Source of the DNA: Octopus sinensis
Taxonomy: Eukaryota
Length of the DNA stretch: 64,000 nucleotides
Assembly (NCBI RefSeq): GCF_006345805.1
Contig: NC_043002.1
Coordinates: forward strand, 45,632,001 to 45,696,000
Reading direction: 5' to 3'
In this document: piece by piece, positions 11,221 to 62,544 of the stretch
Layout of the letters: every line of letters begins with the position of its first letter
How positions within the stretch are numbered: position 1 is the stretch's first letter
The notes under the pieces: model-generated
What the model was told of the DNA's origin: nothing
Seen by the model: the letters and a program-made list of their open reading frames with translations, nothing else
The model's database searches: none
Program-made: the position numbers and the translations under genes

Positions 11221-12613
11221 CATTTTAAAATGAATGTTAAAACAATGATGATAATAATGATTTTTGTATGGGACTCCACTTTCATATAGTTTTATATTAT
11301 GGCTGTTTATTGCTTTATAGATAAATAAGAAAAATATTTTTACATGAAACTTTTTTCATATGGGTTTTCCAAGGAGGAAGGAACAAAGTATTTGATTAGT
11401 GCATTCTTTCTGAGTATGTCAATCAGAAGGGAGAGTATTGGTTGATTTTAATACTGTTTTTAAAAGGCTTAAAATATTAATTTTAAAAAAATCTCATGTG
11501 AAAATGTCTCTATCAATGATTTCTAATATGTTATCTAACTTTTCTGGCAAAGAAGGCCTGAGATCAATATTTAGTGGTGGTGGTGATGGGTCTTGGTGAA
11601 GTGTTAGTAAAAAGGCATGTTTACTAACTGATATTTCTTTCTTTAATCAATAAGTTTTCTAGTTCAGACTTCAGTGAACAATGTTTCATTTTAAAAGGTT
11701 GGTTTTTTTCGGTTTTTTTTTTTTTTTTTCATATTTGCCTGCATATTTTATTTATGTATATTTTGAAAATATTATCATCTCTTAAAATTGGTCCCATCTT
11801 CAAAGTAAGCATATCACTACTGTTTCTTTTTCTGTTAGTCTTGAAAGACAGTTAGCATGTATGTGTATATGATTTGTTTTGCCAGAAAAGCTTTTATATT
11901 TAAAATATTATTTCGTATTTATTAGGTGGTTAGTTCTTTATTTGTTTAGATAAATATAAACAAGATAGATATTTTAATTAATTTACTTCAAGATTTTGTT
12001 TCTTTTGGTGATCTCTTGGAAGAATAAAAGAATTGAAGCTTAAATTTTTGATACAAATATTAATTTTAGCTCTAAAGTTGTGATAGTGATTTTGTGTATA
12101 TTTTTCAAATTGAAAAAAATATTTGCAATGGCTGATGTACATTTTTATTTTATTTTTTTTTAAAGAATTATCTTTTTAATTTTGCTAATAATGATTGATT
12201 TAATTTTTGTTTAATGTAAAATGATTCCAAGTGGAAATTTTGATATTTACTGTAGTTAGGATATTTTAGTGGGGGTGGAAAAAAAAAACTGAAACTTTTT
12301 TCAGTAAAATTTATTTTTTTGTGGATCAGTGATGTAACCACATGAAAGTTATTTTTATTGAATGTGTATATTTCTATTTTATGTATTGCATTTTTTATTT
12401 ATTGTCTCTCCAATCAGCCATTTCAAGTGACATGTATAAATTTCAAGTTTTATTTTGAAGAACTTAAAAAAAGGACTGAATTGATCAAGCTAAAGCTTTC
12501 AACTGCTTATTTCATGTCTTCAGATGATGTTGGTGGAAATGATATTTTTTTCTTTTTGTTTTTCTATTTGTGTGTGTGTGTGTGTCTTCATTTGCCTTTT
12601 GTTCTACAAACAG

Positions 12614-12894
12614 GGATATAAGTAAATCACCACAGGCTCCACAGCCACAAAGACTGGGTGGGCCTCCACCTAAAAAGTTGTGCCAAGACTTCCAAGATTA
12701 TCCGGCTCCTGCAACATCAGGAATTAGAAGAACTCTGGTTACTTTATCAGATAATTCTGCTATCAACAGCTCTGCTGCTCAACAGCCAAGAAGGGCTCCT
12801 CCTTCTGCAACTGCCTCTACCACCGCCGCTACTACTAAACCAATTCTACCTTCCCTCAGAGCTGCTATAAGATCATCCACTGGTTCACCACTGA
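12614..12894 (+). CDS. Internal coding exon, Pro/Ser/Ala/Thr-rich low-complexity region of the BCL11-like zinc-finger gene
   Basis: Acceptor ttttgttctacaaacag and donor A|gtaagc. A 281-nt open frame (DISKSPQAPQPQRLGGPPPKK...SSTGSPL) with higher GC than its flanks. It ends in phase 1, matching the 26454 exon (A+GC = Ser). Confidence 0.8.
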
Positions 12895-13514
12895 GTAAGC
12901 TTTAGAAATCTTTTTAACCCTAAATCCTAAAAAAAAAAAAAATTGTTTATTCATTAAACAAAAAGTATGGTGAAAATTTTACATGTATGGTTTGCCATCT
13001 CTGCTACATAATGTGATGTGATTTGACATAGGGTTTTTTTTTTTTGTCAATATAGTTACAGATCCCTGTTAAAATCAGCTTTTTAAAGAAAACATTTTTT
13101 GGCAAGGAAATAACTTTTTAAATCTGGTCAAATTATATTTAAATCAAAATTTAAAAAAAAAAAATGTAATATTTTTTTTATTGGTGAAAAAATTTTTTTA
13201 TGTACACTTTTGTTATTAATTTTTCAACGGTTTAGACATAAAAGAGGAATCACATACAAATTTTTCCTTTTCCCACTCTCAACTAGCTTTTAATTCATTG
13301 GTGTTTACTTTTGATTCCTACCTCACAGTTTACATATTTTTGTATATTATTAATTGAAAATATTTTTTAAAATTTGATTTAACGATTAACCAGTTTAACA
13401 TGTTTATTTGATCAAAGAACACACATTATGAATAGCTAATGACAGTTGTGATTTAAACTATGAAGTCAATATTTTAGAAATTTAATGGTGCATTTTAACA
13501 TGTTGCTTATTTCA

Positions 13515-14510
<996 letters not shown>

Positions 14511-16236
14511 CTCTAGTCACAAGTGATGAAGTGTTGGAGTTCTTTCCCTTTATATTGATGTTTATTTGACCAGTTTACTTTTCACCTAAGTAAATATTTT
14601 TGTAGTTTTCACAACGTTCACTTATCAAATGTATTATTTTCATTGCTAACTTCATGTTTGGTTATTGTTTCTTTCAGCACAAACATGTAAAAGTGTTTTC
14701 AGTGTTTTGTGTTAAATCTAGAAACCAGTCCTTTGTATTTCAGTGTTGTGCCTTGTTCAACTTTAATATTTAATATTTTATTCTCAATCTGAATGAAATT
14801 TGCAAAGAATTCAATGCACATATTAGATCATTTGTCAAAAATTTTTCAAAAAAAAAAAAAAAAATGTTAACTCGATTCACCCAGCATGTAAGGTCTTTAG
14901 CAGTAACTTTTACAGACATCCTCTACAATTTTTCATTTCTTTTAGTGATCTAAATTTGTGTTTTTTGCTTTCCCTGAAAACAAAAATAAGAAAAAAACAA
15001 ATGTGCTGTTATTAATATCTTCTCTCATATATAAAGATTATTAAATTTCACCAAAATGAACTTTGTAAATATTAAAATATAAACATATAATATGTTAATT
15101 TTAAAGGCAATCAATATTTTATTCATATTGAAAGCTCTTAACTTTTTCCTAATTCAATATGGTATACATCTGGTTTGTTTTAGATTCCAGTATGCTCTTT
15201 TTTATTTTAATTAAAAAAAAAATTTTTTCTTGTATGTACCACTAGCCTGTGTAACTCAGATTGTTGTTATAGGCAAGCCAATTTAATAGTGAAACTCTTT
15301 TTAATGATTTTATTGTATTTTCATCATATCGGCAAGCCAATTTTCTTTAAACACAATAGTCTTTAGCTGAAATATATATTGTGAATACAACTGAATTTTT
15401 ATGACTACAACTATATATAAGGTATGCTATCTTAGCTATTGATTGTTACGATAGTTAAACATGTTTTTATCAATTTTGTATGCTGCAAGAAGAAATGAGT
15501 AATTGATAGAGTGTTCAGAATAAGAATTAATTAGTTTCCCTATAAAAATGAATAAATCGTTACCTAACCTAATCCAGTATAATATTGAACTTCAGTTTTC
15601 TTGTATAATTTTTTCAAGTATTCAATTAGGTTAGCTAGTTCAGGAGTCTGAATTTGTATTTCATAAGAATAACCTATTTAGGAAATTTTCAAGCCATAAC
15701 ATTATTTTGCTTTGAATGAATGAAGGATTAATATTGATGAAAGAGAATAAATGATTATCAATAAAGAGGGTGGGGGGGGGGGGAGAGAAAGATTGGTAAG
15801 TAATATTCTGCAGAAACCAAAAATTGTATAGATAAAGTATTTAATGTTACAATTTTAGGGCTTACAAAATAAAATATTTAATCTGGTGCTTAGAAACTCT
15901 ATATCTAAGGTAAATATTACTTGGAAAAGTATTCCAATGTTTTATTGAATATTGAAAGATAGAAAAACTCATGTTTCTATGTATCAATTGTTGAAAAATG
16001 GAGTTATATCAAGTGTCATTATTGTCATATTTTTTCCAAAGGTTTCAAAATATCAACTGTTATTGCCAGTCATGAAAAAACAGTAATATTTAACCCTTTT
16101 ATTACAAAATATCTGTTGAAATACACTGCCTTTGTTTTAATTTTGAAAATAACAAATTATTTAGTAAAATAATTTTGTCATTATGAAACTGGTGTTTGGA
16201 ACAACTTCACACAGAATTTTGATGGAGTGTTTTAAT

Positions 16237-26453: not shown

Positions 26454-26582
26454 GCAACCAAGACATATTGATTTGTGGTGTGTGTAAGCTTGAGTTTACT
26501 AACCTACACACCTTAGCCCAACACAAGAAGCTTCCCTGTAAGCTTCGGTTTAGTTGTCAGTGTCAAAAGACTCCACAGCCTG
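26454..26582 (+). CDS. Exon encoding a C2HC zinc finger of the BCL11A ZnF0 / ZNF296 / ZFP64 N-terminal type
   Basis: Acceptor ttttcaactgcag and donor G|gtaagt, phase 1-1. Translates NQDILICGVCKLEFTNLHTLAQHKKLPCKLRFSCQCQKTPQP, matching the D-x-L-x-CGxC...HK-xx-C pattern of BCL11/ZNF296 N-terminal fingers. Confidence 0.9.
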
Positions 26583-27039
26583 GTAAGTAATGTTGATAGA
26601 TTCACTGACAGACACAAAATCACTATTTCCAGTCTGTTAGTTATCCTCTAATTTGCATAAATTCTCTCATTTCCCAATTTATAAAAATCTGCTTAGGCTG
26701 CATTATGACAACAGTTCTGATATTTCAACATACTTTTAACATTCTCTTCATTGAATATACTTCTGCTCTGATAGTAATATGATTTATATAAAATAAATTA
26801 TTTTTAAATCTGCTAATCTCTTATGACCATAATTATATTGTACATCTACATAATGCTCTTATTACTTACTTCAGCGAGCACATCAAAGCCCCAAACAAAT
26901 CTGGGGTTATCATCTGCACCAGACAAAGCTCTCAGACTAATATTAGTCGTTAAGCTATTATTCTCATTACATAAGTATCTCTTATTAGATTTTTTAATAC
27001 ACACTAAATATGTGAACACTAATTTAACTTTAGCGTATA

Positions 27040-28086
27040 CTGTAATAACCCATGTAATTTATGCACTTTTTTTTCAAAAACTTGAATGTGTGTGTAAATT
27101 ACATGAGTAGATCGTTTCCATAATTTTTTCATTGAGAAAAGACATACAAAATGTGAAAATTCATATTGGAAGTTGACTCATTTTATGGCAGAATAGGTTT
27201 TTACAGAAAAAATAATGGCTTAAATATGCATAATAAAATCGACTTTAATTTATGCTGGATGGTATAATGCTTACTTTTTCTGTATAAATTACTAAATCCA
27301 TTAAATGGTTAACTAATTTTTGAAGTCTGATGTTCATGCTGATAAAAATGGTCTGGGCCATATTTTACATTGCATGGAGTTTCTTCTACCTATCACAATG
27401 GAGCACATATTTAATATCTCCTTTGCAGTAAATGATTCATAAGTTCTGCTCGTACTAACAATAACAGTAATGATAAATTTTTAAGTTTGCCTGACAGTTT
27501 ATAAATGTGAAAGGGATTAAAATTTCAATACTCCATATCAAAGGTTCTAACAAGAATAGGTGGAAAAGATTTGTTTACATAATCAGTTTGATCAGTCACC
27601 TTCCTCTGTCAATTGAGTAAAGTGTCATCCAAGCTGATGTTTATTGGTAATTAAATTTAATTTGCAACACCTGTGCATATCAGCTTTGTTTTTGTTGGTA
27701 ATTCTTATCAACAACTTTTCCTGTGATCATGATTTGAGAAGACATACAGCAGTATGCTAACGATCGGACATAATCTCTTGTAGGCAAGAAATGTGAAATA
27801 AAGTTTATGATAAACAACACAAACACTTTGTAATTTAATAGCTTTCAATGTGATACCTGTTAAACAGAAATTCTTTTTATTTAATGAAAATTTAATAAAA
27901 TCTAATCATAAGTGAAATTATGCTAAATACAACTAAATTGAAAACCTTTTTCTCCTGGCCGTATCGGCAATTCTGAAAACTTTGGGGTGCAAATTTTACA
28001 TGAATAGAAGCTTTTTGTAACAAATTTTATCCTGAAAATCACCTGCGTAAATTACACAAGTACGCAAATTACATGGGTTTTTATGG
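27040..28086. mobile_element. Non-autonomous Tc1/mariner-superfamily (pogo/Tc2-like) element
   Basis: TA-flanked imperfect TIRs CTGTAATAACCCATGTAATTT and AAATTACATGGGTTTTTATGG; no intact ORF. Confidence 0.6.
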
Positions 28087-28495
28087 TATATTATACACTT
28101 TATATTTTTTTATGTTCATCTTTTTAGTCTTATTACTTATGTTTATGATATCATTGTTCTAAAGGTAATATTTTGTGGGATGATAATGAAAGAAATGTAC
28201 TTTGCTGATAATAAACATGCTGCAAATACTCTAGTAGGGATAGCAATTTACTATTATTACTCATGCTTTGATTATTAGCTGCGACTAGGTAATGAAAAAG
28301 TTCAATGTAAACTCTTCTTGCTAGATAACCTCAAATTTTATATTGACCCTACATTTTACTATATGTATGTTAAAACATCATTGAAACAAGTCATATATCA
28401 ATTCTGATATTAATTTTTTTTTGTTGTGGATTTTATAATGTTAAACAGCTACAGGTTATTTTATTAATATTGCATGTAAAACATACATACACACA

Positions 28496-28536
<41 letters not shown>

Positions 28537-29643
28537 ATTTATGTATCCTACTTAATGTATACATACTTGATAGTCCAATCACTGCAGTATTTTTCCTGAG
28601 GCAACATCTGTTATAGATTCACCATGTTAAAAACACAATGCATATTAGGAAGAGACAAAAATTCGTTCCAATAGCAGCTAGCAAGAGCACCAGATGAATT
28701 TTGGTCATTTTAGGCTATTTCAATGATGAATCTAGCCACATGCTCAGACAAGAATTTGTCATCTCAGATATAGGAAAAGGGGTCAGTGTTTGTTTCCTAA
28801 GGTTATCAAGTTTTGATTTGTCCAATGCTCCATTCATATCAGGGTTTAATATTTGATTTTGTCTAGTTCTGCTTGTTTGAGTTTCAAAGAAGACTGATAG
28901 TTATTACCTTTTGAAGTCATCTCTACATATTTTCTATAAAAATTAGAGCCTGCCCTGAAAGTTATGTTTCATATATGAATACTTCTATGTAAACAATGTG
29001 ATCGAGAATAGGTAATGGGTGCATATGCATATTTCTTCAGCACTACATCTAACTCATTAACCATTCACTTATAAGCCTTAAATATACTTGGTTGGATGTT
29101 ATGGTAGCATAACAAAATACAGTGTCCCTAGCAGCTGCCAGGAATGTGTTTAATATGTAAAATCAGTATATTCAATTGTGTTACACCACTAAAATTAGCA
29201 GTTATTTAAACAATGTGTTTGTAGATGGTTAATGGGTTGAATGTGATGTTGAAGAAGGAGCAAGAACCCCTGAAATATGCATGTACACCCATTCCCTATT
29301 TTGTATTTTCGATTGCATTGTTTACATAGATGTATTCGTATATGAAATGTAACTTTCAGTGTTGGCTCTAATTTCTATAGAAAATCTGTAGAGATAACTT
29401 GAAAAAGTGATATCACACTGCTAACACAGGTAGGACACAATATTGACTTATAAGCCTTTAATATACTTGGTAGTATGTTATGGTTGCATAACAAAATATG
29501 GTGTCCCTACCAGTAATTAATATGATAATTATTATATATCTCAGCTAAACACAGTGACTGAAAAAAAATCAAATCAATTTCTGGTTTCCATTTATTTCTT
29601 TTTTCTTTTAATGTTATCTCATGTTTATTCCATTGTATCTTAG

Positions 29644-29771
29644 AACAAGAACAGGAGGCTTTGATTCTCAACTGTGCTACTTGTGAAATGACATTTTTCT
29701 CTGCATGGAGCCTTGTGCAACACTGTCAGACAGAACATAGTCTGGCTTTGTTCAAAGATGGTAGACAAATC
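29644..29771 (+). CDS. Exon encoding a BCL11-type first C2H2 finger
   Basis: Acceptor ttgtatcttag and donor C|gtaagt, phase 1-0. Translates EQEQEALILNCATCEMTFFSAWSLVQHCQTEHSLALFKDGRQI; compare BCL11A [27 protein letters not shown]. Confidence 0.9.
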
Positions 29772-30509
29772 GTAAGTATACCGCAAGTTTAAATGTATCA
29801 AATGTATACTTTTCAGACAAAAAGCTGAATGTTATATTTCTTACGTATTTCTTCTCACAAATAATAATAGATAAATAACACTCTCTTTTTTTTTATCTTT
29901 CACTCATATCAATATTTTCCCTTTTTTGTTTTTCCGTAGTAAAGCTATTATTTGGGATATTAACTTTAGTGAGTCTTCAGAATTTTAAAAATCATTTACC
30001 AAATTTTAAATGTGAAGTAAGGATCTTAAGCTCTTATAACTGAAATTGTCTCTTAAAAACAAAATGAGAGGGGTGGGAGATTTTAGACTATGCAGCCATT
30101 AGGAAACTTTATTTTCACTTTAAAATGTTTATCTTTATATGCTCTGAAAATACTAGGTGAAATGGAAACAAGTGTATCACATATTTATTTTGTCTCGCAA
30201 TTGATGAACAATGTTGGTTGCAAGTTTTATAATAGGCCGATCTCTGATTCACTGTATTCTGACAGCAAGAATGCTAAGAAAGAGTCTATAACTAAGAACA
30301 AATTCGCTTAAAGGATGCTGGTGTTTTGGCTTACTTACCAATGTTTATATCTTTCATCAATATTCTCTCTCCCTCCCCTCCCTCTTCTCTCTCTCACACA
30401 TGCATGTGTTTGTCAAAAGATATTATTCATAGATGCACATGCATACACACCATAGGTTTCTCTATGTTTTTTTCTATCTTCAGTTACATTGTGTACATAA
30501 ATGTATTCT

Positions 30510-30625
30510 GTCAACCAAATCCATCCACAAGGTTTTGGTTGGCCTGGGTCAGTAGTAGAAGACACTTGCCAGGGTGCCAAGCAATGGGACTGAACCAGTA
30601 CCATGTGGCTGACCATCTTCCTTAG
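30510..30625 (-). mobile_element. Same SINE head, opposite orientation to 24452
   Basis: Reverse complement ccacatggtactggttcagtcccattgcttggcaccctggcaagtgtcttc... matches the family. Confidence 0.7.
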
Positions 30626-30967
30626 AATTATTGCAGATACTAAAAAACATCTATTGATTGTAGAACCTTTGTTTCCTAGTACTCATTACATTGGTTTAAT
30701 TTAGAATAAAGGGATTTGAAACAGGAAAAAAAAACAAAGAGTAAACATTTTCAAAAGATATTTAAACATTTGAATAAGTACCACCAAATAATGTTGATTT
30801 CCGTTACCTCGGCACAGCAAATTTTTACAAATAAGAGGTTCATAATCTCAAATTCCACTGAAGTTGAGAATTGTTCCATTTCTCCAGAGTGAATAAAAAT
30901 AATTAGAGAAACAACATCCTATGAGGTTTTAGATCTGGAGTAAATGTGTGAATCTCTATTCAAATCC

Positions 30968-31180
30968 CAAAGGCTCCCTCTCAACACATGACTATGATGT
31001 TCCTCAACTACTACTCATTGTCAGAGATGCAGATATTGTCAGCCACTAAAGGACATGTTCAAATGGTTATGGTCAAGCAACTGAAAAGCAAATCTGTGGT
31101 ATTGAGCAAAATTTTTGCTATAATGATATTTCTGCTTCAATAACTCAGCACTAAATCTGTCTGAAATGTAATGAAAAATA
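30968..31180. repeat. Interspersed repeat, inverted homolog of 19405-19587
   Basis: caaaggctccctctcaacacatg...gatatttctgcttca matches the reverse complement of 19405-19587. Confidence 0.75.
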
Positions 31181-31373
31181 GGTCAGTTTGAAAACATTGA
31201 TGCCTGGTCATGAAAGCAAAGTTTGAACGGAATAGTAGTAATTTTCTTTGATTTCTAGATAGCAGCTATCAAGAAATAACACTTACTATCAAAGACAAAA
31301 ATAAAAGAAATTTTATTACAGTGTAATGTTATTACTTTTAACCTTTTTTCTATTAAAAAGAATCCAACCTAAA

Positions 31374-31588
31374 TTAACCCTTTAGATTATTCTATCATGT
31401 AGTGCTTTTTCATTTAGATTGTTTTTAATTAATGTATTTTTTTGTAGCTTTGAAATTTTAATGATGTGATTGTATATTTTTAGAATAGCATTGAAGGGTA
31501 GGTATGACAGGCTGGATCTGGTTAGTTAGAACATAAAACAAGTTGCATATTTGGGCCGGAAGTGGCTAGTTTAAATGCCAAAGGCTTA
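31374..31588. mobile_element. TTAA-MITE, copy 3 (decayed)
   Basis: TTAACCCTTTAG ... TTTAAATGCCAAAGGCTTA; ends about 90 nt upstream of the 31679 acceptor. Confidence 0.7.
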
Positions 31589-31678
31589 GTACAAGTGTTA
31601 GTTTGAAGGTTTGGTGGAAATGCATTAATTTCCGTATTGTAGCTTTTTTTTTTTTTGCATCTGATTTTTCCCTTTCAG

Positions 31679-31783
31679 TTAGATGATTCTAATGGCACCA
31701 GTGTAAAAATAGAATTATCATCTAATGATACAACTCAAAATTCAACTGCAGTAGAAGTCAAACAGGAACCTAAAGATCAGTAG
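31679..31783 (+). CDS. Probable last coding exon of the BCL11-like gene (ends at TAG 31781-31783)
   Basis: Strong acceptor ttttttgcatctgatttttccctttcag, phase 0. Translates LDDSNGTSVKIELSSNDTTQNSTAVEVKQEPKDQ*. A donor-like G|gtaaat follows at 31790/31791. Confidence 0.75.
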   Translation, partial: LDDSNGTSVKIELSSNDTTQNSTAVEVKQEPKDQ

Positions 31784-32174
31784 TATAATGGTAAATATTT
31801 AAAATTTTTCTATTATTTACTTTACTTTTTGTATTATTTACTTCGCTTTTATTTTCGTATATTTAAAATTGCATTTTATTATTAGAAAATCTGTTACACT
31901 TCGTATTTTAACTGAAATGTTTTATTTTATTTTATTTATTTATTTCAGGAGCTGCTATAATTTTAACTTTGAAGTACATTTCACTGAAAATCCAACTGTT
32001 TTCCATTTTGGGTGTAGAATTTTCAAAGAAATCCACATATCCTATTACCCTTTCATATCATCTTTTATTGAAATTATAACTTAAGACTATACACACACAC
32101 ATATATCTCTAGAATTTCTGGCATGTTTCGAGAAATTTTCATGCCTGTGTTTTTTTCTCTCATTGTTTATACAG

Positions 32175-34490: not shown

Positions 34491-34709
34491 ATGTATATAA
34501 ATTGTGCCAAGGCTATTGTTCACAACAGAAAATGTGCAACCTGTGAAAAGGTGTGCCTTTCAGTTGGAGGATTAAAAAGGCATGTCGAAAGACCTCATAA
34601 TGTGGCACCTGTTCCCTCTGCCAGGCAGCACAGAATGTGCAAATCTTTGGCCGGGTTCAAGAGTCATACAAGGACCTCATACTTCATCATCAATGACTTA
34701 TTTCAATGA
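34491..34709 (+). mobile_element. RTE-like LINE C-terminal Cys/His motif remnant
   Basis: CATCEKVCLSVGGLKRHV...MCKSLAGFKSHTR resembles the C..C.R.C.S..GL.SH.R motif that ends RTE-clade ORFs. Confidence 0.5.
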
Positions 34710-45119: not shown

Positions 45120-48105
45120 CTAAGCAGACCAACTGGAAGCAAAGAAGATTGAATGGTGCCTAAAAAAGAGTTTGTGGAAGGGTCACATGCTGTGTATGCC
45201 GAACTAAGAAAGGTGTGGTAGATGGGAGAGTAGGTAGATGTGTATGCAGCAGAAATTCAGAGGTTGGCCACATTCAATGGATTTACAGGGGAAGCCCTGG
45301 AAAAAGTAGTGCAGCTAGTGTTCATGAATGGTCTTTTTGACAAGATATTAGTTCAGCTGCAACAGCTGCCTGGTAACAACAACATGTTTATGAGCAAACT
45401 CATTGCTCAAGCCTGTGTGTCAATGCAAAATGCAGGGTAAAATGGTGTGGTGCTAGCAGCTAAGGAAGCCTACAGAACAGGTGGTGATCAATGAAGGATG
45501 AGCAGAGAAGAGCCTTTGTGGAATAGCCATGAATCATTTAAAGGCCAGTGCTTTAGGTGTTGGGGTACCCTCATAGTGAGGAATTTCAGAAAGCTGAAGC
45601 CCAAACCAGTTTGCTCCAGTGTAAACAGACAGGATATATCACCAGCAACTGTAGTCAGGGAAAGGAATAAAAGAGTGGTGGGTGGATTACTGTGCCACTA
45701 CCTATCCCTGCAAGCAAGTAGAGGCACTCAAACAGTCACTGCTTATAGTGAAGGTCCTAGTTGGGGTGAAGGTATTACAAGTCCCTATGAATATGGGAAG
45801 CACAACAATCTTAGTAACCCTAAAAATGGCTAAAAAGTTAAATGGGATGAGTAGTATAAAGGCAGTTGATGACAGAGAGATTAGATGTAGAGGCAGCAGT
45901 GAAGTGGAGTTGGTGGTGCAGGAGAACAAGGATAAGGTTGTAAGTAATTGTGATTGACCATGTGGTGGATAGAGATGATGTGGTAATGAGTATGGATGTG
46001 GTCAGCCACCAAGGAGATGTCACTATTCATAAAGATGGGTTTATGTTTAGTAGTCTGCTGCAGAGGAGTCATGAGAGCCCTGAAGAGAAATGTGCTGCAT
46101 ACACAATTGTAGACAAAGATTTTCAGACTGTGTTTGACAGTCAGCAGTGGACAGTTGAGTGGGACGGGAAAGGAGGGCCCTCAACATTGAAGAATAAGGT
46201 AAGCTATTACTGATAGACTCTTAAGAGTGTTGCTAAGTGCAAGTTTGAGGGAGAGATGGAGAATATTTCAATCTTTTGGAAGGAGGTGGTAAAGAGCAGA
46301 GTGTTGCCATTAATGGTAGTGGTGCAGCCAATGAAAATCAAGTCAGGCTGGTACTGGACTTCCAAGAGCTAAATGACTATGTATCATGCCACACGGGTGG
46401 GGAGGTTACCAAAGTCTGCTGGGAAACATTGTGAGAATGGAGACAGATGACGAGAGCTTCCACAATTGTTGACTTGAGGTCAATATATCTGCAGCTACAA
46501 ATTGCTGAGAAACTATAGGTGTATTAGCTGGTAAGATATAAGGGCCAAACATACTGTTTGACCAGGCTGATTCAGCACCAAAGATCATGGTGATGGTTCT
46601 CAAGTCTAATCTAGGAAAGGTAGACAAGATGAAAAAAGCCACCAACTCCTATACTGACAATATCTTAGTAGACATGAGTGTGGTGTTGGCCACAGAAGTC
46701 ATAAGTCACCTAAAGAAGTTTGACTAACATAAGGTGGCGAGCTGGCAGAAACGTTAGCATACCGAGCGAAATGCTTAGAAGCATTTCGTCTGCTGTTATG
46801 TTCTGAGTTCAAATTCTGCCGAGGTCGACTTTGCCTTTCATCCTTTCGGGGTCGATTAAATAATTACCAGTTACGCACTGTGGTCAATATAATTGACTTA
46901 ATCCATTTGTCTGTCCTCTCTGTGTTTAGCCCCTTGTGGGTAGTAAAGAAATAGGTATTTCGTCTGCCATTACGTTCTGAGTTCAAATTCCACCGAGGTC
47001 GACTTTGCCTTTCATCCTTTCGGGGTCGATAAATTAAGTACCAGTTACACACTGGGGTCGATGTAATCGACTTAATCCCTTTGTCCTTGTTTGTCCCCTC
47101 TATATTTAGTCCCTTGTGGACAATAAAGAAATAAAGAAGTTTGACTAACTGCAAAACCACTAGCGGTGATGGAAGGAGGAGCTGCACTAGGGCTCAAGCT
47201 GCAAAGAGACCAGGTAGATGTATTGATATTTTGGAGAGGAAATGAGATTCTGGAACTGGGTACCAGCACAAACAGATGAGCACTGTTCTTGATGTGTGGG
47301 AAACTGGTGGGTCACTATCCAAAGGCAGGTTGGCTCTGAATGGTATGTAGCTACACCAAGAGACAATTGGACAGGGTGAGCTGGGGTGGAGAAAAGTGGG
47401 AGGGAGAGGATGGTGGCTGAGATCCTAGAAAGGAGTAAGAGGACATACCAGCTTTCCAGAGGAAGCTAGTATGTGCTCAAATTGGAGAACAGGACCATAT
47501 GGTGTGATGCTAGCAGCATAACAATAAGGCTCATTCTGGAAATAGGGGGTACTGAGGTGGAGGATACAGTCTGGCTTAGGAAAATGACTGATTGCAACCA
47601 CATCAATGTGGCTGAATTGAACATAATGCTGAAAGGAGTAAATCTAGCCTTGAGATGAGGGCTGTGTACTATTGAAATTTGAATCAATTTGGCCAATGTG
47701 CTTGGATGGATGGGATTAGGGATCACCGATGAGAAGGGTAGTGGGAATATTAATAGAATGCCAGCTAGGGATTCTGGGAGAGTGAGCTGCTGAATTTGGT
47801 TTGAAGTTGAGTGCAGTCTTTGTGCCCTTGGATTGGACTAAGGCAGACATCCTAACCAGGCTGAAAAAAAGCCTTGTGGAAAGTGCCAGAGGATATGGAA
47901 TGGAAGACAGCTGTAGTGTGTTGGCTGAGTGACTCGGAGCTAAGGAAATTGCATATCATGCATCATATGGGAGTAAATAGGATCCTGTATCTAGCCAGGA
48001 AAGTTGACTTCAACGTTACTAAAGCATTCAGAAAGTGGTTAGGAGTTGTGACAGGTGTCAATCCATCCACCCCACTCCAGGCATGCATGAGGTAGGAAAC
48101 ATTCC
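45120..48105 (+). mobile_element. Decayed Ty3/Gypsy LTR retrotransposon, gag-pol portion upstream of the CR1 insertion
   Basis: Gag-like YAAEIQRLATF..LVQLQQLP; degenerate knuckle QCFRCW; RT-like GLNSAPKIM and YTDNI; RNase H WCDAS..NHINVAEL; integrase HH..CDRC. Numerous stops and frameshifts. Confidence 0.8.
46729..47131 (+). mobile_element. tRNA-derived SINE with a tandemly duplicated body, inserted in the Gypsy RT with an 18-bp TSD
   Basis: TSD TAAAGAAGTTTGACTAAC at 46711-46728 and 47132-47149. Head GGTGGCGAGCTGGCAGAAACG. Two units begin ATTTCGTCTGC at 46783 and 46957, each with GAGTTCAAATTC. Confidence 0.9.
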
Positions 48106-49625
48106 ATCGAAGCGGCCAAAGAAGGCGAAGGAACCGGCGGTCGTTTCTGCACATGATCGTTCCTGTGTGGATTCTTCCTCATCTGCCTTTTCGGTCCCGG
48201 GGGTTCCCCAACCTAATTTGAGGAGCGTAGACTCAAACCCACCTGAAGACCGTTGTTCTCCCCAAAAGAAGAAACGTCGTCAAAACTCCAGTGGGGCAGA
48301 TTTAGCTATGAAACCTGACCATGATAAACGGTCTCCTGTTGACGCAGAGTCACCCTTGATTTCTTCCCTGGAGACGTCCAAACCGAAGGGAACAAAATCG
48401 AAGCAGCCAAAGAAGGCGAAGGAACCGCGGTCGTTTCTGCACATGATCGTTCCTGTGCGGATTCTTCCTCATCTGCCTTTTCGGTCCCGGGGGTTCCCCA
48501 ACCTAATTTGAGGAGCGTAGACTCAAACCCACCTGAAGACCGTTGTTCTCCCCAAAAGAAGAAACGTCGTCAAAACTCCAGTGGAGCAGATTTAGCTATG
48601 AAACCTGACCACGATACACAGTCTCCTGTTGACGCAGAGTCACCCTTGATTTCTTCCCTGGAGACGTCCAAACCGAAGGGAACAAAATCGAAGCAGCCAA
48701 AGAAGGCGAAGGAACCGGCGGTCGTTTCTGCACATGATCGTTCCTGTGCGGATTCTTCCTCATCTGCCTTTTCGGTCCCGGAGGTTCCCCAACCAAATTT
48801 GAGGAGCGTAGACTCAAACCCACCTGAAGACCGTTGTTCTCCCCAAAAGAAGAAACGTAGTCAAAACTCCAGTGGGGCAGATTTAGCTATGAAACCTGAT
48901 CACGATAAAATCTGTTTGGATTCTCCCTCACTTGTCCTTCCCATTAATGCCATTGCTCAACCAATTCTGAACGATCTCGATGTGAGTTCATCTGGGGAGT
49001 GGTGCTCCCCCAAACCGAAGAAGAGGCAGTGCAGTTCCAAACCAGGCGGGATAATTATGACCACTAAACCCATTCCGATCGACCCCACAGGCCGACATAA
49101 GTCCGATGGCTATGAAACCACCCTTCCAATGAAGAATCGAATACCGCAGCTCATAGTAGAGAACATTTTGCCCACTCAAGATCAGCAATAATTTATGGTA
49201 AAGCTGAATCCACCTGTGATACAGGCGTAAACCGCCTAAAAGATGACATTAATTTTGTTTCCATTTTAGTTGGAGAATTGTTCTCTGTGAACGAAAATGT
49301 CAGTGTCCATAAGGTCGCTCGGCTAGGAAGATTCCAAGCGAACCCAACCTCAGATACTAGACCACGCCCAATAAGGGTAATCTTTTCTTCCGATCGGGAG
49401 GCTTCAGTCTTTCTGAACAGAGCTCAGACACATGCCTGGGAGGACCCCAATATGGGTTTTCGCGAGGAATACTCACTAAGAGAGAGAATTCGCCGGAGAA
49501 ACCTAACATCCGAACTAAAGATTAGGAAACAAATGGGAGAGAAGGGTTTACGAATCCAAGATGGACAGATAATCAAGTCCTACCTCTGGTCCCATGCTGT
49601 AGTGCTGACAGGGAAAGTGATGTGA
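48106..49625 (+). pseudogene. LINE ORF1 (partial), with 291-bp tandem repeats and two apparent -1 frameshifts
   Basis: About 2.75 copies of a 97-aa unit, followed by the C-terminal RSAIIYG..RLGRF..RPRPIRVIF..EEYSLRER typical of CR1/L2-type ORF1. Frame breaks at about 48427 and about 49121. Confidence 0.75.
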
Positions 49626-52509
49626 GGGCAAATCGAAGTGAAGTTGATACCCCCGTCAACGATGCTATCTCTGATACCCCTTATTCTGCTTGTTCCCCAA
49701 CTCCCGCCCCTCAGACTTCACAGCTCAGCATCGTCTACACCAACTCGTGCTCCTTATTCCCAAAGTTCAGTGAACTATTTACACTGGCCATACGTGACTC
49801 CCCTGATGTGATAGCTATCACCGAGACTTGGCTGACTCCAGCAGTAAAGGACTCAGAAATCCACCTGCAGGGCTACGTCCTTTTCAGATGTGACAGAGGA
49901 AAAAGGCGAGGCGGAGGTGTTGCTGTGTATGTTAAGTCTGAGCACAAACCGTCCAGCGGTATTCTACCCACTAATGCTCAACCTACAACAAAATTCGATG
50001 CCGTCTATTGCAAGCTGAGCCTATCTGAGTTTTGCCTGCCCGTGTTGGCTGTCTACAGGCCACCTCTTGCCGACCCCCAAGACGATGCTCATTTACTCGA
50101 AGCGATAAGATTCGTTTCAGCTTCGCATGACTGTTTGGTACTAGGAGACTTCAACGCTCCCACGATCGATTGGCCCGCATCAATTTGTACAACATCTTCC
50201 CGGTTTGGCCAGGCCCTTCTTGACGTGGCTGAAGATTGTTTTCTATCGCAACATGTTGAATATCCGACAAGGCATCGGTCTGGGCAGCAGCCATCTATGC
50301 TAGATCTGGTATTCTCCCGCCATCCAAGATCAGTGTCAGACGTATCTGTGTGCGCCCCTCTTGCCAAGAGTGATCATGCGGTCCTGAAGTTCGTCATGCA
50401 CACAACTTTTTCTACGCCCACGACTACTTCGCTGCCACGTAGAGTCTTCTCTGCAATTAATCTTGAAATTCTAACCGAGGCTTCCGCGCTTCTGGACTGG
50501 CGATCCCTGATGACGTTGTCCTCAGTTGACGAACTATGGTCATCCCTCAAGGCATATGTAATCTGTTTGACTGACCAGGCAGTTCCCGTTGGGCTTCCCA
50601 AGAAGAAAAAACACAAGCCCTGGGTGACGAAGAAGGTTAAACGAGAACGTCGACTCAGAGATATTGCTTGGGCTGAATTCAAAAATCTGGATTCGACTGC
50701 AGCTTTTGAGGTGTACAAAACTCAACGAGACCGAGTCGTGAAAATTGAAAAGAAAGAACGCTTCAGTTATGAATACAAAATCGCGGCAAATGCCAGTAGC
50801 AATCCAAAAACCTTCTTTGCCCATGTCCAGCGGAATTCCCGCTTGAACAACCAGATTGCAACGTTATAGACTCAACAGGCGTATCGATTGAGGACCCTTA
50901 TCAACAGAGTCAATTATTTGCCGAGGATTTTTCAACTATTTTCAAACAAGATGATGGTCGTGAACCCCCTCCATTTGATAGATCGGTACCTCCAATGCTT
51001 CGATTGGTCATCACGCGGGACGAAGTTAAACGTGTTATTCAAGGCCTCGATGTCAACAAGGGTCACGGCCCTGACGGCATACACCCACGGGTTATCAAAG
51101 CGTTGGCTCCGGTCATCTGCGAGCCCTTAACACGACTATTCAATATGTCATTGGCGACGGGTGTTATACCTGCAGACTGGAGAACAGCGATAATCTGCCC
51201 AATTTTCAAGAAAGGGAGCCGCGAAGACCCGCTTAACTACCGACCGGTTTCCCTTACATCAATAATCAGCAAGATGTTCGAAACCATCCTTAAGAAAAGT
51301 ATGATGCTCCACCTCCTAAAAACAGCCTCTATCTCTGATTCCCAACACGGCTTCGTGCCGAAGAGATCATGCTTGACCAACTTACTAGTAATGGAAGAAT
51401 TGGTGACGCGCATCCTCGATGATAGTGATGCTGTTGACATCGTTTTATTGGACTTTGCCAAAGCTTTTGACTCGGTAAACCACCGCCTATTACTTGTCAA
51501 GCTTCAAGCATATAGTTTCCATCCGGATATTGTACAATGGGTTGGTGCCTCCCTCTCAGATCGCTCCTTCCAAGTCCAAGTTAATGGTTCGCGGTCCGAC
51601 GTCTCCAGTGCGAGCAGTGGCGTGCCTCAAGGTTCAGTGCTTGGGCCCTTGTTGTTCTTAGTCTTCATAAATGACTTGCCCGACGACCTCAAGCAACACA
51701 CCCTTCTATTTGCCGACGATATCAAACTGGTCGCTCCTCGCGGTAATATAGAGGATCTTCGTCGATGCCTCCACCAAATTTGGAAGTGGTCTAACGATTG
51801 GGACCTGTGTCTGAACGTGTCAAAGTGCTGTCATCTGCCTGTCGGCTCTACTCCTGCAACTCAACTTGATTTCGAGCCGGGTCGTCTGCTGCTGGAGAGG
51901 ACCGATCAGGTAAAGGACCTGGGTATCTTGGTGGATTCCTCCTTTTCGCCTTCGGCCCAGTGCGTCCATGCTGCCAACAAAGCACGCGGAATTCTGTTCT
52001 TGATTCGACGGTCATTCGGAATGCTCACAGCAGCCATATTCCTACCACTCTATGTCACGCTGGTGAGACCCATATTGGAGTATGGGATTCAAGCCTCTTC
52101 TCCTTATCTCCTCAAAGACATACAGCATCTCGAAAGAGTCCAGAAGCTGGCTACCCGCATGGTTCATGGTCTCAAAAATTTGTCCTACGAAGAAAGGCTG
52201 AGGACGCTTGACCTTTATTCTCTTGAAAAACGCCGCCGCCGTGGTGATCTCATTCTCGCCCACAACATCATAAGCGGAAAGTGTAACCTCTCGAAAGAGC
52301 TGTTCTTCACTCCTGCTCCAGAGCGTCGGCTGCGGGGTCATTCCGAAAAGCTCTACCTGCGACGATTTCATCTCAATCGAAGGAGAGGAGCTTTCTCCGT
52401 CCGGGTTGCGGATTCATGGAACAAGCTGCCAGACGAGATGGTGAAGATGCCGACGACCGCTTTGTTCAAAGCCTCCCTGGACCTCAAGTGGCCTGAACTC
52501 TTTACATGA
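49622..52509 (+). pseudogene. LINE ORF2 (endonuclease + reverse transcriptase) with a single -1 frameshift at about 50866
   Basis: EN motifs ITETWL, LGDFNAP, LDLVF, SDH; RT motifs NYRPVSLTS, DFAKAFDSV, GVPQGSVLGPLLF, LFADDIKL. Restoring one A at TTA(A)TAGAC gives continuous ...IATLIDSTGVSIEDPYQQSQLFAEDFSTIF... Confidence 0.92.
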
Positions 52510-54334: not shown

Positions 54335-55001
54335 TATTGCTCTATAGCTTAGAGTGTGCTTCTTTTTCGGATTTATGTTTCACCGACGATATATGTGTGT
54401 GCGCGCGCGAAAATATAAACAAGACTTTTGGATTAAAAAAAACAACCGTAATTCCAATTTCAAACCCGTTAATACCTGTTATGAAAAACACGAATAATAA
54501 AGAATCTATGGAAAAACCACCCTTTTCCTTCTCGTTAGTGTTGATAGCTATTCTAAAACCCAGTCTAATTATATTATTCCTCATAAACGGTTTCAATAGT
54601 TTTAACAGAAAGATTAGGAAGAATTAGATGAAAGTTCTCCGGTAATTTTCCTTCATGTAAATAAATGATTACAGATTGTATTATATTATATTTTGTGCGT
54701 GTGGGTGGGTAGCTTTTTATAGCGATATATTTTAAAAGAACCGCTTGCGCCACCAAAAATTAACATTTTTCCCAGCTGTTTAAACTTTTTTAACCTAATT
54801 TAATCTGTGACATCACACTTGCCCGGATAGGGAAGTACTTTATAACTTTTATGATAATCGTAGATATTGTATATTTATTTTCTTTATCGTCTCCCGTCTC
54901 GCATATAGTGTGACAAAAACGGATGTTAAAGAGGAGTGGATTTTATCGGAGTTAAGAAGTACAGTTCTATAGTTTTGGTTTTCAATCACGATCATACGGT
55001 G
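54335..55001 (+). promoter_or_regulatory. Probable MyD88 promoter / 5' UTR
   Basis: Non-repetitive sequence directly upstream of the ATG, visibly richer in CpG than most of the window (e.g. gtgcgcgcgcgaaa, cttgcgccacc). The TSS cannot be located from sequence alone. Confidence 0.5.
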
Positions 55002-55365
55002 ATGGCTTTTGAAGAAAGTTACGATAAGTGGAAAAAGATGTTTAACTGGACAGAAACACAGTGTGATTATCCATTGCAAAACGTTTTGCGTGTGTCCTCC
55101 AGGAAACAACTTGCTAGACATATAAACATAAAAAGCGAAATTCTCAGTCATAACGGACAATGTCCCGATTTTCGTGGTTTGGCAGAATTGATTGGATTTG
55201 ATTATCTTGATGTTAAGCAGTTTGAGACAGCTTCCGATCCAACTTCGGTCTTGCTGGACGAGTGGAATTCTACTTTCCATACAACTGCCACGATGGGCAA
55301 GTTGTGTGATTATTTAGAATACTTGGGACGCGTAGACTGTCTTCAAGACTGTCAAAAATGTTTTC
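55002..55365 (+). CDS. MYD88: MyD88 homolog, first coding exon (death domain)
   Basis: ATG at 55002 to donor C|gtaagt (phase 1). RKQLARHIN..DFRGLAELIGFDYLDVKQFETASDPTSVLLDEW..ATMGKLCDYLEYLGRVDCL aligns by eye with human MyD88 [61 protein letters not shown]. No downstream TIR exon was found in the window. Confidence 0.92.
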
Positions 55366-56445
55366 GTAAGTTCAGTAACATATTTATTTACTCTCTCTCT
55401 CTCTCTCCTTAAGGACACCTGTTGTGAGGGCTAAGACAACAGAATACTAGTTCAAATGCGTTGCTTATTTAGCTTTGCGTTCAAATCCCACGTGGTCGAT
55501 TTTGCTTTTCTCTCTTCGAAAAAATTAGAACTAATGTCGAGGTGAACAGTAGATTACATCCGTCAACAAATTTATTCTTTTAACTTAAATCAAAAAGAAA
55601 TTCCTGTTTGATTCATTTATATATCAAATTTATCAAGATTTCTTGTTATTCTTTTCACATCAAATGTTAATATTTGACTGGTATTTTATCATTATACGCA
55701 TAATTTTTATTATTGGTATTTATTATCTTTGATTATTTCTGTCGCAGTGCCTGATTATCAGAATCGTTAGAGCATCTAACAAAAATGCCTCTCAGTATTT
55801 TGTTACCATACTTAAACTTTTCTGGGTTCAAATACCGCCGCAGTCTTTTATAATTTCGAATTCGATAAAAACAAAATCTGTGAATTGCTGGGGTCGATAC
55901 ATATTCCTATCATGCATTGTTAAATGCGAATTGAATTATAAGAGAACAACAGTAATTAGATATTAGCCGGGGAAATGATGAAGTCATTCTTATTGAGATT
56001 TGAAATCACTTATGTAAGAGGACAAAACTATTATAAAGGTTTTGCTTGAAATTTTAGACAGCTCACAGTGAGCTTCTCTAATTTCCTTGAAATTTTCATT
56101 ACCTTAGTCATAGTTTCTCGCCCTTTGAGGTCAATGAGTTAGTTGGAGACCTTGAAAGGATGAAAAGTAAAGTTGAGCTCAAAATATAAAGAACCAAGAA
56201 CAAATTCCACAAAGTAATTTTTCTATGTCCTTCCGCTGCTTTTGGTATCAACCTGCCTAAAACTGCCTTTAATTTACAGTTTTAAAGTGGTCAAAATTTC
56301 ATTTTAATTCATGTTCCAAACACCTGCTTAATAATGACAAAGTTATTTTAATAAATTCTTCATTATTTCCAAAATTAATTGAAACAAAGGCAGGATATTT
56401 TTCAACAGAAATATAGTAACAAAAGGTTTAATAGTTAATGATAGT

Positions 56446-62079: not shown

Positions 62080-62120
62080 TATATATGTGCATATATATAT
62101 ATGTATATGTGTGTGTATAT

Positions 62121-62201
<81 letters not shown>

Positions 62202-62222
62202 ATATATATATGTGTGTGTGTG

Positions 62223-62261
<39 letters not shown>

Positions 62262-62265
62262 TTAT
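62080..62265. repeat. Compound (TA)n/(TG)n microsatellite (others at 18078-18125 (ATT)n, 25363-25398 (TG)n, 63230-63310, 63745-63900)
   Basis: Seen directly. Confidence 0.9.
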
Positions 62266-62544
62266 ATTAAGGGCATTACTATACATAAATGCCTCATGCT
62301 ATGAGAGACTCTTAAAGTCAAAACTACTATAATAAACACATTGTACCGAATGCAAGGGAATGCAACTCTCGAAGCGAGCTCCTTAAAAACAGATTCAGCC
62401 ACAAATCATATGATTTCATAATTAGTGCACAAAATGCACTTTTTAATCATCAGTGCAGGTATAATCAAGACACATAAAAATGAACAAAAAATCAATATAC
62501 CAGACAAACACCAAATGTATCCAGCATAGTATATAGAGTTGTTC

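What the first reader, a model, noticed from the sequence alone, without database searches (positions are those of the whole stretch)
26454..31783. BCL11/ZNF296-like protein reduced to the oligomerisation finger plus one C2H2, without the C-terminal DNA-binding cluster
Seen: C2HC finger, short linker, SAW.L.QH-type C2H2, a 34-aa tail and a stop. At least 100 aa of unrelated low-complexity sequence precede the C2HC, and no MSRRKQ NuRD-binding motif is visible in the window. Established: in BCL11A the N-terminal C2HC mediates self-association and the C-terminal finger cluster binds DNA. Inference: a distinct paralog or fusion that uses the BCL11 N-module as an interaction domain, possibly a dominant-negative or adaptor for true BCL11, grafted onto an unknown N-terminal protein encoded upstream of the window. 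This is the best candidate for an undescribed host system here.
Basis: partly seen in the sequence, partly recalled or inferred. Interest (0 to 1): 0.7.

Follow-up and report, generated by a model that had tools for sequence, protein, structure and literature searches.

The report
hnRNP C-like gene, BCL11-type fingers
These exons are the back half of an octopod RNA-binding protein of the hnRNP C/RALY family, which in invertebrates ends in two zinc fingers related to the self-association fingers of BCL11; it is a conserved, already annotated gene, not a cut-down BCL11.

Summary
Exons at 26454-26582, 29644-29771 and 31679-31783 join in frame through canonical splice sites. They encode a C2HC finger, a 24-aa linker, an "SAW" C2H2 finger, a 34-aa tail and a stop. 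A low-complexity exon (12614-12894) precedes them.

The gene is not a BCL11 paralogue. All four exons match, 90% identical and collinear to the stop, residues 138-353 of Argonauta hians GAB1607308.1 (353 aa). That protein's N-terminus, encoded upstream of the window, is an hnRNP C/RALY-type RRM (PDB RALY E=2e-28).

The layout RRM, disordered linker, C2HC, C2H2, acidic tail recurs across Bilateria: molluscs, annelid, brachiopod, priapulid, scorpion, insects, flatworms, acorn worm, amphioxus. Sources often name these proteins "hnRNP C-like" or "RALY". None of 108 members has further fingers.

The finger-pair profile aligns collinearly with BCL11A/B ZnF0+ZnF1 (hhalign 98.9%, E=1e-17; control ZnF2-3 61%).

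Most likely function (inferred): a protein-protein or self-association module, sitting where vertebrate hnRNP C has its tetramerising coiled coil.

Interest is modest. This is an ordinary conserved gene; the shared module is the only notable point.

The parts
12614..12894 (+). Exon U: disordered Ser/Thr/Pro/Ala-rich linker. It carries the basic PPPKKLC motif (family consensus PPxKRxR, NLS-like) and IRRTLVTLS. It corresponds to aa 138-234 of the Argonauta orthologue.
   Evidence: tblastn at 80% identity over 97 aa. Acceptor ...aaacag|G and donor CACTGA|gtaagc, ends in phase 1. 88% DNA identity to Argonauta L001 29474-29863. pLDDT below 60 in the full-length model.
26454..26582 (+). Exon A: the C2HC zinc finger with the conserved flanks DILICG...HKKxxC and LRFxCxC.
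   Evidence: Translation. Splice sites ctgcag|GC and CCTG|gtaagt. 91% identical to P0001 aa 231-276. All invariant family residues D, C, G, C, H, C are present.
26474..26539 (+). Finger 1: CGVCKLEFTNLHTLAQHKKLPC (C-x2-C-x12-H-x4-C), the counterpart of BCL11 ZnF0.
   Evidence: HMM and hhalign alignment to BCL11 ZnF0 with a 2-aa gap. AF2 beta-beta-alpha fold, pLDDT about 90-96.
26555..26563 (+). CxC motif (CQC) after LRFS. It is near-invariant in the family and also present as FGCQCQ in a long BCL11B isoform.
   Evidence: 98 of 108 members have CxC between the fingers. Near-invariant C36 and C38. P0253 alignment.
29644..29771 (+). Exon B: the C2H2 'SAW' finger plus LALFK.
   Evidence: Translation. 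Splice sites cttag|AA and AAATC|gtaagt. 93% identical to P0001 aa 277-320. 80% DNA identity to Argonauta.
29673..29738 (+). Finger 2: CATCEMTFFSAWSLVQHCQTEH, the counterpart of BCL11 ZnF1. It has the invariant Trp at helix position +2.
   Evidence: BLASTP 13/27 identical to human BCL11A ZnF1. 36-39 bits on BCL11 ZnF1. W in 104 of 108 members. pLDDT 87-95.
31679..31783 (+). Exon C: 34-aa acidic tail (net charge -4) and the TAG stop (31781-31783). This is the true C-terminus.
   Evidence: 94% identical to the last 34 aa of P0001, ending at the same stop. Acceptor tttccctttcag|TT. Family tails are acidic, median net charge -11.
31784..32082 (+). Probable 3' UTR (conserved non-coding sequence after the stop).
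   Evidence: The blastn block 31656-32082 is 72% identical to Argonauta L001 44805-45195. The alignable sequence at this locus ends there.

Best explanation
Region 26454-31783, together with exon 12614-12894, is the 3' part of the octopod orthologue of a bilaterian hnRNP C/RALY-like gene.

The full protein is about 350 aa. Its layout is:
- an N-terminal hnRNP C-type RRM (exons upstream of window position 1);
- a disordered basic, Ser/Thr-rich linker with an NLS-like PPKK motif (exon U);
- a C2HC finger and a C2H2 finger;
- a short acidic tail.

The finger pair is homologous to the ZnF0-ZnF1 module at the N-terminus of BCL11A/B (and apparently ZNF296). The gene itself is not a BCL11.

Shown here: the gene model, the orthology, the family architecture and the module homology.

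Inferred: the RRM binds U-rich RNA as in hnRNP C/RALY. The two fingers do not read nucleic acid but serve as a protein-protein, most likely self-association, module. They occupy the position where vertebrate hnRNP C carries its tetramerising coiled coil, so several RRMs could act on one transcript.

My confidence in the identity and architecture is about 0.9. My confidence in the self-association role is about 0.45.
For: Gene model:
- Four exons with canonical, phase-compatible splice sites.
- Collinear tblastn match to P0001 aa 138-353, ending at the same stop.
- 90% identity, E=6e-120.
- The exons are conserved islands against the Argonauta locus L001. There the RRM exons lie about 14 kb upstream of exon U, which places them just outside this window.

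Identity of the N-terminus:
- P0001 aa 18-107 hits the RALY RRM 1WF1 (E=2e-28) and the hnRNP C RRMs 1WF2 and 2MXY (E about 1e-26 to 1e-25). The next RRM is at 1e-9.
- Pfam RRM_1 match.

Family:
- 108 of the top 150 hits carry both fingers at fixed spacing, and 47 of those also have the hnRNP C-type RRM motif upstream.
- None has a further finger.
- Tails are acidic in 91%.

Module homology:
- hhalign of A2 against the BCL11 N-module: 98.9%, E=1e-17, 84 columns. The control against ZnF2-3 gives 61%, 26 columns.
- HMM domain scores.

Function:
- Helix contact positions are acidic in finger 1 (D/E at -1, +3 and +6). Finger 2 has W (104/108) at +2 and D/E at +3. This is unlike DNA-reading fingers.
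- BCL11A ZnF0 forms a tetramer in a crystal (9B4P). ZnF1 is predicted to dimerise. CCHC fingers are known as protein binders (papers read; PDB entries found).
- AF2 gives RRM, disordered linker, two independent beta-beta-alpha fingers and a disordered tail. It shows no coiled coil.
Against: - The RRM exons are not in the window, so linkage to them rests on orthology with Argonauta, not on a transcript from this species.
- No RNA-seq was available.
- Finger 1 has x12 spacing, not the x14 of BCL11 ZnF0. It also lacks the run of five hydrophobic residues that forms the BCL11A tetramer core, so the same interface may not exist.
- The window peptide does not reach Pfam PF25491. Members match that model only below threshold, best E 0.0018.
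- Only monomer models could be made.
- The invariant Trp could equally stack on RNA bases.
- The fly gene treated in the literature as the hnRNP C orthologue (CG42458) has no described molecular mechanism. I could not verify that it is the Drosophila family member I found (P0069).
Confidence: 0.78

Rival explanations
1. One reading: a BCL11/ZNF296 paralogue reduced to its oligomerisation module, which acts as a dominant-negative or adaptor for the true BCL11.
For: The finger pair is homologous to BCL11 ZnF0-ZnF1. BCL11A itself makes short S and XS isoforms without DNA-binding fingers, which have been proposed to modulate multimerisation. A gene annotated bcl11a/b is reported in Octopus vulgaris, so a partner may exist.
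Against: The N-terminus of the orthologue is an hnRNP C/RALY RRM, not a BCL11 N-terminus, and there is no MSRRKQ. The architecture is conserved across Bilateria as an RNA-binding-protein family. Finger 1 lacks the x14 spacing and the hydrophobic core residues of ZnF0. No interaction data exist.
Confidence: 0.04
2. The two fingers are an auxiliary RNA-binding (or single-stranded nucleic-acid-binding) domain. They would extend the specificity of the RRM rather than act as an interaction module.
For: The protein is an RNA-binding protein by its RRM. The invariant Trp at helix position +2 and the conserved S/N at -1 of finger 2 could contact bases. Some members give weak, sub-threshold matches to zf-C2H2_jaz, a dsRNA-binding finger family.
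Against: Acidic residues dominate the canonical contact positions of finger 1, and +3 of finger 2 is D/E. The tail is strongly acidic. The homologous BCL11 fingers are self-association surfaces. Pfam hits to RNA-binding finger families are far below threshold.
Confidence: 0.2
3. The exons are a decaying pseudogene or an accidental ORF pattern, and the terminal 'tail' exon is a mis-read.
For: There is no transcript evidence from this species. The word-index protein search with the peptide found nothing.
Against: Frame, splice sites and stop are intact. Protein identity to Argonauta is 90%, with conservation concentrated on the exons. All 12 invariant family residues are retained. The tail exon is 94% identical and ends at the same stop.
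Confidence: 0.02

Closest known systems
Invertebrate and cephalochordate hnRNP C/RALY-like RRM-zinc-finger proteins. Examples: Argonauta hians GAB1607308.1; Lingula XP_013382175 'hnRNP C'; Branchiostoma CAH1246335 'RALY'; Echinococcus 'hnRNP C'; Drosophila teissieri XP_043651168. Probably includes D. melanogaster CG42458.
   Same: Collinear match over all four exons. Same finger spacings, same invariant residues, same CxC motif, an acidic tail and a stop shortly after finger 2.
   Different: Nothing structural; this is the octopod orthologue. Insect members carry long poly-Q insertions and longer tails. The equivalence with CG42458 comes from the literature label 'fly hnRNP C orthologue'. It was not checked against its sequence.
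Vertebrate hnRNP C1/C2, RALY and RALYL.
   Same: The RRM of the orthologue hits the RALY and hnRNP C RRMs at E about 1e-28 to 1e-25, against 1e-9 for the next RRM. The order of parts also matches: RRM, a basic NLS-like motif (family consensus PPxKRxR, compared with the hnRNP C NLS region as I recall it), an association domain, then an acidic C-terminus.
   Different: By established knowledge, vertebrate proteins have a basic-region/leucine-zipper coiled coil (CLZ) that forms the tetramer, and no zinc fingers. Here that position holds a C2HC + C2H2 pair, and AF2 shows no helix in the linker.
BCL11A/BCL11B (and ZNF296) N-terminal ZnF0-ZnF1 module.
   Same: Order of parts: DxLxCGxC...HKxxxC, then (CxC), then EP..xC..C..F.SAW.L.QH.Q..H...IY. 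Profile-profile probability is 98.9% over both fingers. ZnF0 and ZnF1 mediate BCL11 multimerisation.
   Different: BCL11 ZnF0 has x14 spacing and a hydrophobic knob. Its linker is 60-140 aa rather than about 24. The module is N-terminal, follows an MSRRKQ motif, and is followed by five DNA-binding fingers. Here it is C-terminal, follows an RRM, and no DNA-binding fingers exist.
BCL11A-S and -XS short isoforms.
   Same: They carry ZnF0 (and ZnF1 in S) without the DNA-binding arrays.
   Different: They are splice products of the BCL11A gene and share its N-terminus. The octopod gene is a separate locus with an RRM N-terminus.

Membership tests
BCL11/ZNF296 transcription factors | N-terminal MSRRKQ-type NuRD/RBBP4-binding motif | tested here: not met
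   No RRKQ or MSRRK-like motif in a plausible exon in any frame of the window. The Argonauta orthologue starts MLHVKSLTHPN... and then runs into an RRM.
BCL11/ZNF296 transcription factors | CCHC ZnF0 matching Pfam PF25491 (C-x2-C-x14-H-x4-C) | tested here: not met
   The window finger has x12 spacing. It gives no PF25491 hit at E<=10, whereas human BCL11A scores 52.8 bits. 17 of 33 family members hit only below threshold, best E 0.0018. Homology is still detectable profile-to-profile.
BCL11/ZNF296 transcription factors | ZnF1 with the F.SAW.L.QH.Q..H...IY signature | tested here: met
   13/27 identical to human BCL11A ZnF1. 36-39 bits against real BCL11A/B sequences, compared with 0-7 bits for ZnF2-6.
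BCL11/ZNF296 transcription factors | C-terminal DNA-binding C2H2 arrays (ZnF2-3, ZnF4-6) | tested here: not met
   The stop at 31781-31783 is shared with Argonauta. There is no conserved finger ORF downstream in the window. None of 108 family members has a finger after finger 2.
hnRNP C/RALY family | N-terminal hnRNP C-type RRM | not testable with these tools
   The RRM exons lie upstream of window position 1. No tblastn hit to P0001 aa 1-137 appears in the window. In the 90%-identical orthologue the feature is met: RALY 1WF1 at E=2e-28, hnRNP C 1WF2 at E=2e-26, and Pfam RRM_1.
hnRNP C/RALY family | Basic NLS-like motif in the linker after the RRM | tested here: inconclusive
   The family consensus is PPxKRxR. 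The window has GGPPPKKLCQD in exon U. This is similar but shorter, and the function is untested.
hnRNP C/RALY family | Leucine-zipper-like coiled coil (CLZ) tetramerisation domain | tested here: not met
   AF2 of the full-length orthologue shows no helix between the RRM and finger 1 (aa 101-237, pLDDT 42-63). The finger pair occupies that position.
hnRNP C/RALY family | Acidic C-terminal tail | tested here: met
   The window tail has net charge -4 over 34 aa (sequence). The family median is -11, and 91% of tails are negative.
Bilaterian hnRNP C-like RRM + C2HC/C2H2 family | Finger pair with invariant D, C, G, C, H, C / C, C, W, L, H, H, spacing x12/x4 and x12/x3-4, and a linker of about 13-93 aa (median 26) | tested here: met
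   All 12 invariant columns of alignment A1 are present in the window sequence.
Bilaterian hnRNP C-like RRM + C2HC/C2H2 family | Protein ends after finger 2 without further domains | tested here: met
   A 45-aa C-terminal remainder after finger 2 in both the window and Argonauta.

The most novel reading that the evidence does not exclude
The C2HC + 'SAW' C2H2 pair may be an ancient, portable self-association module. It would be shared by two otherwise unrelated regulators: the chromatin repressor BCL11/ZNF296 and the ancestral hnRNP C.

Two consequences would follow:
- Ancestral hnRNP C oligomerised through zinc fingers, and vertebrates later replaced them with a coiled coil.
- In invertebrates the RNA-binding protein and BCL11 could co-oligomerise through the homologous fingers, coupling nascent-RNA binding to a chromatin repressor.

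The homology itself is well supported here. The probability given is for hetero- or homo-oligomerisation through these fingers being real and functionally important.
Probability: 0.12. Interest if true: 0.6.

Novelty: new member of a known kind. Interest (0 to 1): 0.3.

Why it matters
As a locus it is ordinary: the octopod copy of a conserved RNA-binding-protein gene that genome pipelines already predict.

Two points have some wider value.

- It shows how a two-finger fragment seen without its 5' exons can be mistaken for a truncated transcription factor.
- The clinically important BCL11A ZnF0/ZnF1 multimerisation module has clear homologues at the C-terminus of invertebrate hnRNP C-like proteins. 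I found no paper that mentions this. If the fingers self-associate there too, hnRNP C oligomerisation (the basis of its RNA length-measuring behaviour in vertebrates) would be older than its coiled coil. Invertebrate proteins would then offer simple two-finger models for studying the BCL11 interface.

Tried and rejected
It is a LINE with endonuclease and reverse-transcriptase ORFs.
- A third finger-like pattern at 34533-34598 sits in a short ORF between stops. It is not conserved with Argonauta and does not resemble the family. I rejected it as an exon.
- The word-index protein search with the 119-aa peptide found nothing, although a 90%-identical protein is in the collection. The alignment-based search returned only fragments of 160 aa or less. 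Both look like tool limitations, not biology.
- The last protein search, with human BCL11A, listed only vertebrates. I therefore could not confirm a separate cephalopod BCL11 locus. The only evidence is a paper that names a bcl11a/b gene in O. vulgaris.
- PDB sequence searches with the peptide and with the profile, and Foldseek on the module model, gave only generic C2H2 matches. They did not discriminate.
- The Pfam scan of the peptide gave nothing above threshold.
- Two BCL11 papers (Grabarczyk 2018, Zheng 2024) were not held.
- Rfam and ARAGORN found nothing in the window.
- A conserved block at 14555-14823 was checked as a possible alternative exon. I rejected it because its indels are not multiples of three.

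Full report
**1. The observation**

The window is AT-rich eukaryotic DNA (26-38% G+C over most of its length) with microsatellites and transposon relics.

On the + strand, 26456-26582 translates to NQDILICGVCKLEFTNLHTLAQHKKLPCKLRFSCQCQKTPQP. Positions 29646-29771 give QEQEALILNCATCEMTFFSAWSLVQHCQTEHSLALFKDGRQI. Positions 31679-31783 give LDDSNGTSVKIELSSNDTTQNSTAVEVKQEPKDQ followed by a stop.

Each segment begins after a polypyrimidine tract and AG. Each internal segment ends before GTAAG, and the codon phases fit.

An upstream ORF (12570-12905) contains an exon, 12614-12894, that ends in phase 1. It joins exon A in frame as ...GSPL-S-NQDIL.

No MSRRKQ-like motif exists in the window. The description is accurate in every element.

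**2. What the gene is**

An exhaustive phmmer search of 1.84 billion cluster representatives with the 213-aa conceptual product gave 214 hits at E<1e-3.

The best hit, P0001, is Argonauta hians GAB1607308.1 (353 aa), labelled 'uncharacterized protein LOC115212971'. It is 90% identical, and the query aligns to its residues 139-353, that is, to its C-terminus.

tblastn places P0001 aa 138-234, 231-276, 277-320 and 320-353 on the four window exons, ending at the same stop.

P0001 residues 1-137 are not encoded in the window. In the Argonauta locus (L001) they lie in two exons about 14-18 kb upstream of exon U. This window has only 12.6 kb upstream of exon U.

Between the two species, DNA similarity at the locus is essentially limited to the four exons, their immediate flanks and a probable 3' UTR. 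So the window comes from an octopod cephalopod, and the gene model is conserved.

**3. The missing N-terminus**

P0001 aa 18-107 is an RRM (Pfam RRM_1) and is specifically of the hnRNP C/RALY type.
- Against all PDB sequences the top hits are the RALY RRM 1WF1 (E=2.2e-28) and the hnRNP C RRMs 1WF2 and 2MXY/2MZ1 (E about 1e-26 to 1e-25).
- The next RRM of any other protein is at 1e-9.

**4. The family**

Among the 150 best hits, 133 have a C-x2-C-x12-H-x4-C finger. Of these, 108 also have a C-x2-C-x12-H-x3/4-H finger 13-93 aa (median 26) further on, and 47 of those show the hnRNP C-type RRM motif upstream. Most of the rest are short fragments or partial models.

- No member has any further finger.
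- In RRM-containing members the remainder after finger 2 has a median length of 67 aa and a median net charge of -11.

Named members come from the following groups:
- gastropods, bivalves and a cephalopod;
- an annelid (Owenia) and a brachiopod (Lingula, 'heterogeneous nuclear ribonucleoprotein C');
- a priapulid, a scorpion and a springtail;
- beetles, a termite and flies (Musca, Hermetia, Aedes, Phlebotomus, Drosophila teissieri);
- flatworms (Macrostomum; Echinococcus 'hnRNP C');
- an acorn worm (Glandiceps) and amphioxus ('RALY', 'hnRNP C-like').

The architecture is thus at least bilaterian and is routinely annotated as hnRNP C-like.

In the literature the fly gene treated as the hnRNP C orthologue is CG42458. 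It is a modifier of TDP-43 toxicity and a neuron-subtype marker of unknown molecular function. I could not check that CG42458 is the Drosophila member found here.

AF2 of the full-length orthologue gives these regions:
- a confident RRM (pLDDT above 93);
- a disordered linker (aa 101-237);
- two confident beta-beta-alpha fingers separated by a flexible stretch;
- a disordered tail.

The isolated module gives the same picture (pLDDT 82, pTM 0.39).

**5. Is the BCL11 resemblance real?**

Yes, and it is specific.

An HMM built from 32 family modules (A2) was run against BCL11A/B sequences returned by the database. The domain scores were:

| BCL11 region | Score | Note |
|---|---|---|
| ZnF0 | 16-18 bits | needs a 2-residue gap |
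| ZnF1 | 36-39 bits | includes the upstream 'EP'; in a long BCL11B isoform also the FGCQCQ motif, which matches the family's LRFxCxC |
| ZnF2-6 (same proteins) | 0-7 bits | internal control |

Profile-profile comparison with an alignment of eight BCL11 N-modules (A3) gives probability 98.9%, E=1e-17. The 84 aligned columns cover both fingers in order, with the long BCL11 linker treated as an insertion. The same query against BCL11 ZnF2-3 gives 61% over one finger.

I treat that as a lead only.

Pfam's BCL-11A CCHC model (PF25491) does not reach threshold on the window peptide. It hits 17 of 33 members only weakly, while human BCL11A scores 52.8 bits.

So this is homology of a module, not membership of the BCL11 family. 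The MSRRKQ motif, the x14 spacing and all the DNA-binding fingers are absent.

**6. How it most likely works**

Shown: an hnRNP C-type RRM protein carries a BCL11-type finger pair and an acidic tail.

Inferred from the RRM's similarity to hnRNP C and RALY: nuclear binding of U-rich RNA.

Inferred for the fingers: a protein-protein function, most probably self-association. The reasons are:
- (a) In finger 1 the helix positions that read DNA in canonical fingers are mostly D, E or S. In finger 2, position +2 is Trp in 104 of 108 members and +3 is D/E.
- (b) The homologous BCL11A ZnF0 crystallises as a tetramer (9B4P), and ZnF1 is predicted to dimerise. ZnF0 mutations destabilise the protein. CCHC fingers generally bind proteins.
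- (c) The fingers sit between the basic linker and the acidic tail. By established knowledge, this is where vertebrate hnRNP C has its tetramerising leucine-zipper-like coiled coil. No helix is predicted in the invertebrate linker.

Caveats: finger 1 lacks the two-residue insertion and the hydrophobic run that build the BCL11A tetramer core, and no multimer modelling or experiment was possible.

I put self-association at about 0.45, an RNA-contacting role at about 0.2, and binding of other partners (BCL11 among the candidates) in the remainder.

**7.

This is not a reduced BCL11 paralogue, a possible dominant-negative or the 'best candidate for an undescribed host system'. It is the local orthologue of a widespread, already annotated RNA-binding-protein family.

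A paper names a bcl11a/b gene in Octopus vulgaris. I could not retrieve it, because my last protein search listed only vertebrates.

**8. Verdict**

The feature is real and the gene is ordinary and conserved. It is a new member of a known kind.

The one point of wider interest is the module shared between BCL11/ZNF296 and invertebrate hnRNP C-like proteins. I found no paper describing it among those I could search. It suggests that oligomerisation of ancestral hnRNP C was finger-mediated.

Interest 0.3. No step needed to be referred.

Noticed in passing
window 54936-55412 (+): An ORF with a Death domain (Pfam PF00531, 41.8 bits). Probably the first coding exon of a MyD88-like adaptor gene downstream of the hnRNP C-like gene. 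TIR exons were not looked for.
   Followed up: partly
window 48035-52509 (+): A LINE-type retrotransposon. It has ORFs for an endonuclease (PF03372/PF14529, 49622-50869) and a reverse transcriptase (PF00078, 50995-52509). They are preceded by a tandemly duplicated Ser/Pro/Lys-rich ORF segment (48035-49191). This explains the G+C rise to 0.44-0.49.
   Followed up: partly
window 57865-59249 (-): Two adjacent ORFs matching the N- and C-terminal parts of a piggyBac-type transposase (PF13843). It is a broken copy.
   Followed up: partly
window 14555-14823: An intronic block 72% identical to the corresponding intron of Argonauta hians (L001 30344-30605). Its indels are not multiples of three, so it is non-coding. 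It may be a conserved regulatory or splicing element, or an old repeat.
   Followed up: partly
window 34533-34598 (+): A lone C2H2-like pattern, CATCEKVCLSVGGLKRHVERPH, in a short ORF bounded by stops. It is not conserved with Argonauta and is probably a transposon relic rather than an exon.
   Followed up: partly
window 13605-14569 and 62051-63980: Long TA/CA-type microsatellite tracts that generate spurious 'YIYIYI' ORFs on both strands.
   Followed up: no
L001 (Argonauta hians BAAFZT010000056.1) 10001-44932: The orthologous gene spans about 35 kb. The RRM exons are at about 11.6 and 15.1 kb, exon U at 29.5 kb, and the finger and tail exons at 41.4, 43.5 and 44.8 kb. The intron sizes are of the same order as in the window.
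   Followed up: yes
protein hits P0349 and P0350: Two very short 'Mycobacterium' hypothetical proteins (44 and 32 aa) sit in the same 90% cluster as an Aedes albopictus member of this family. This looks like insect contamination in bacterial assemblies.
   Followed up: no
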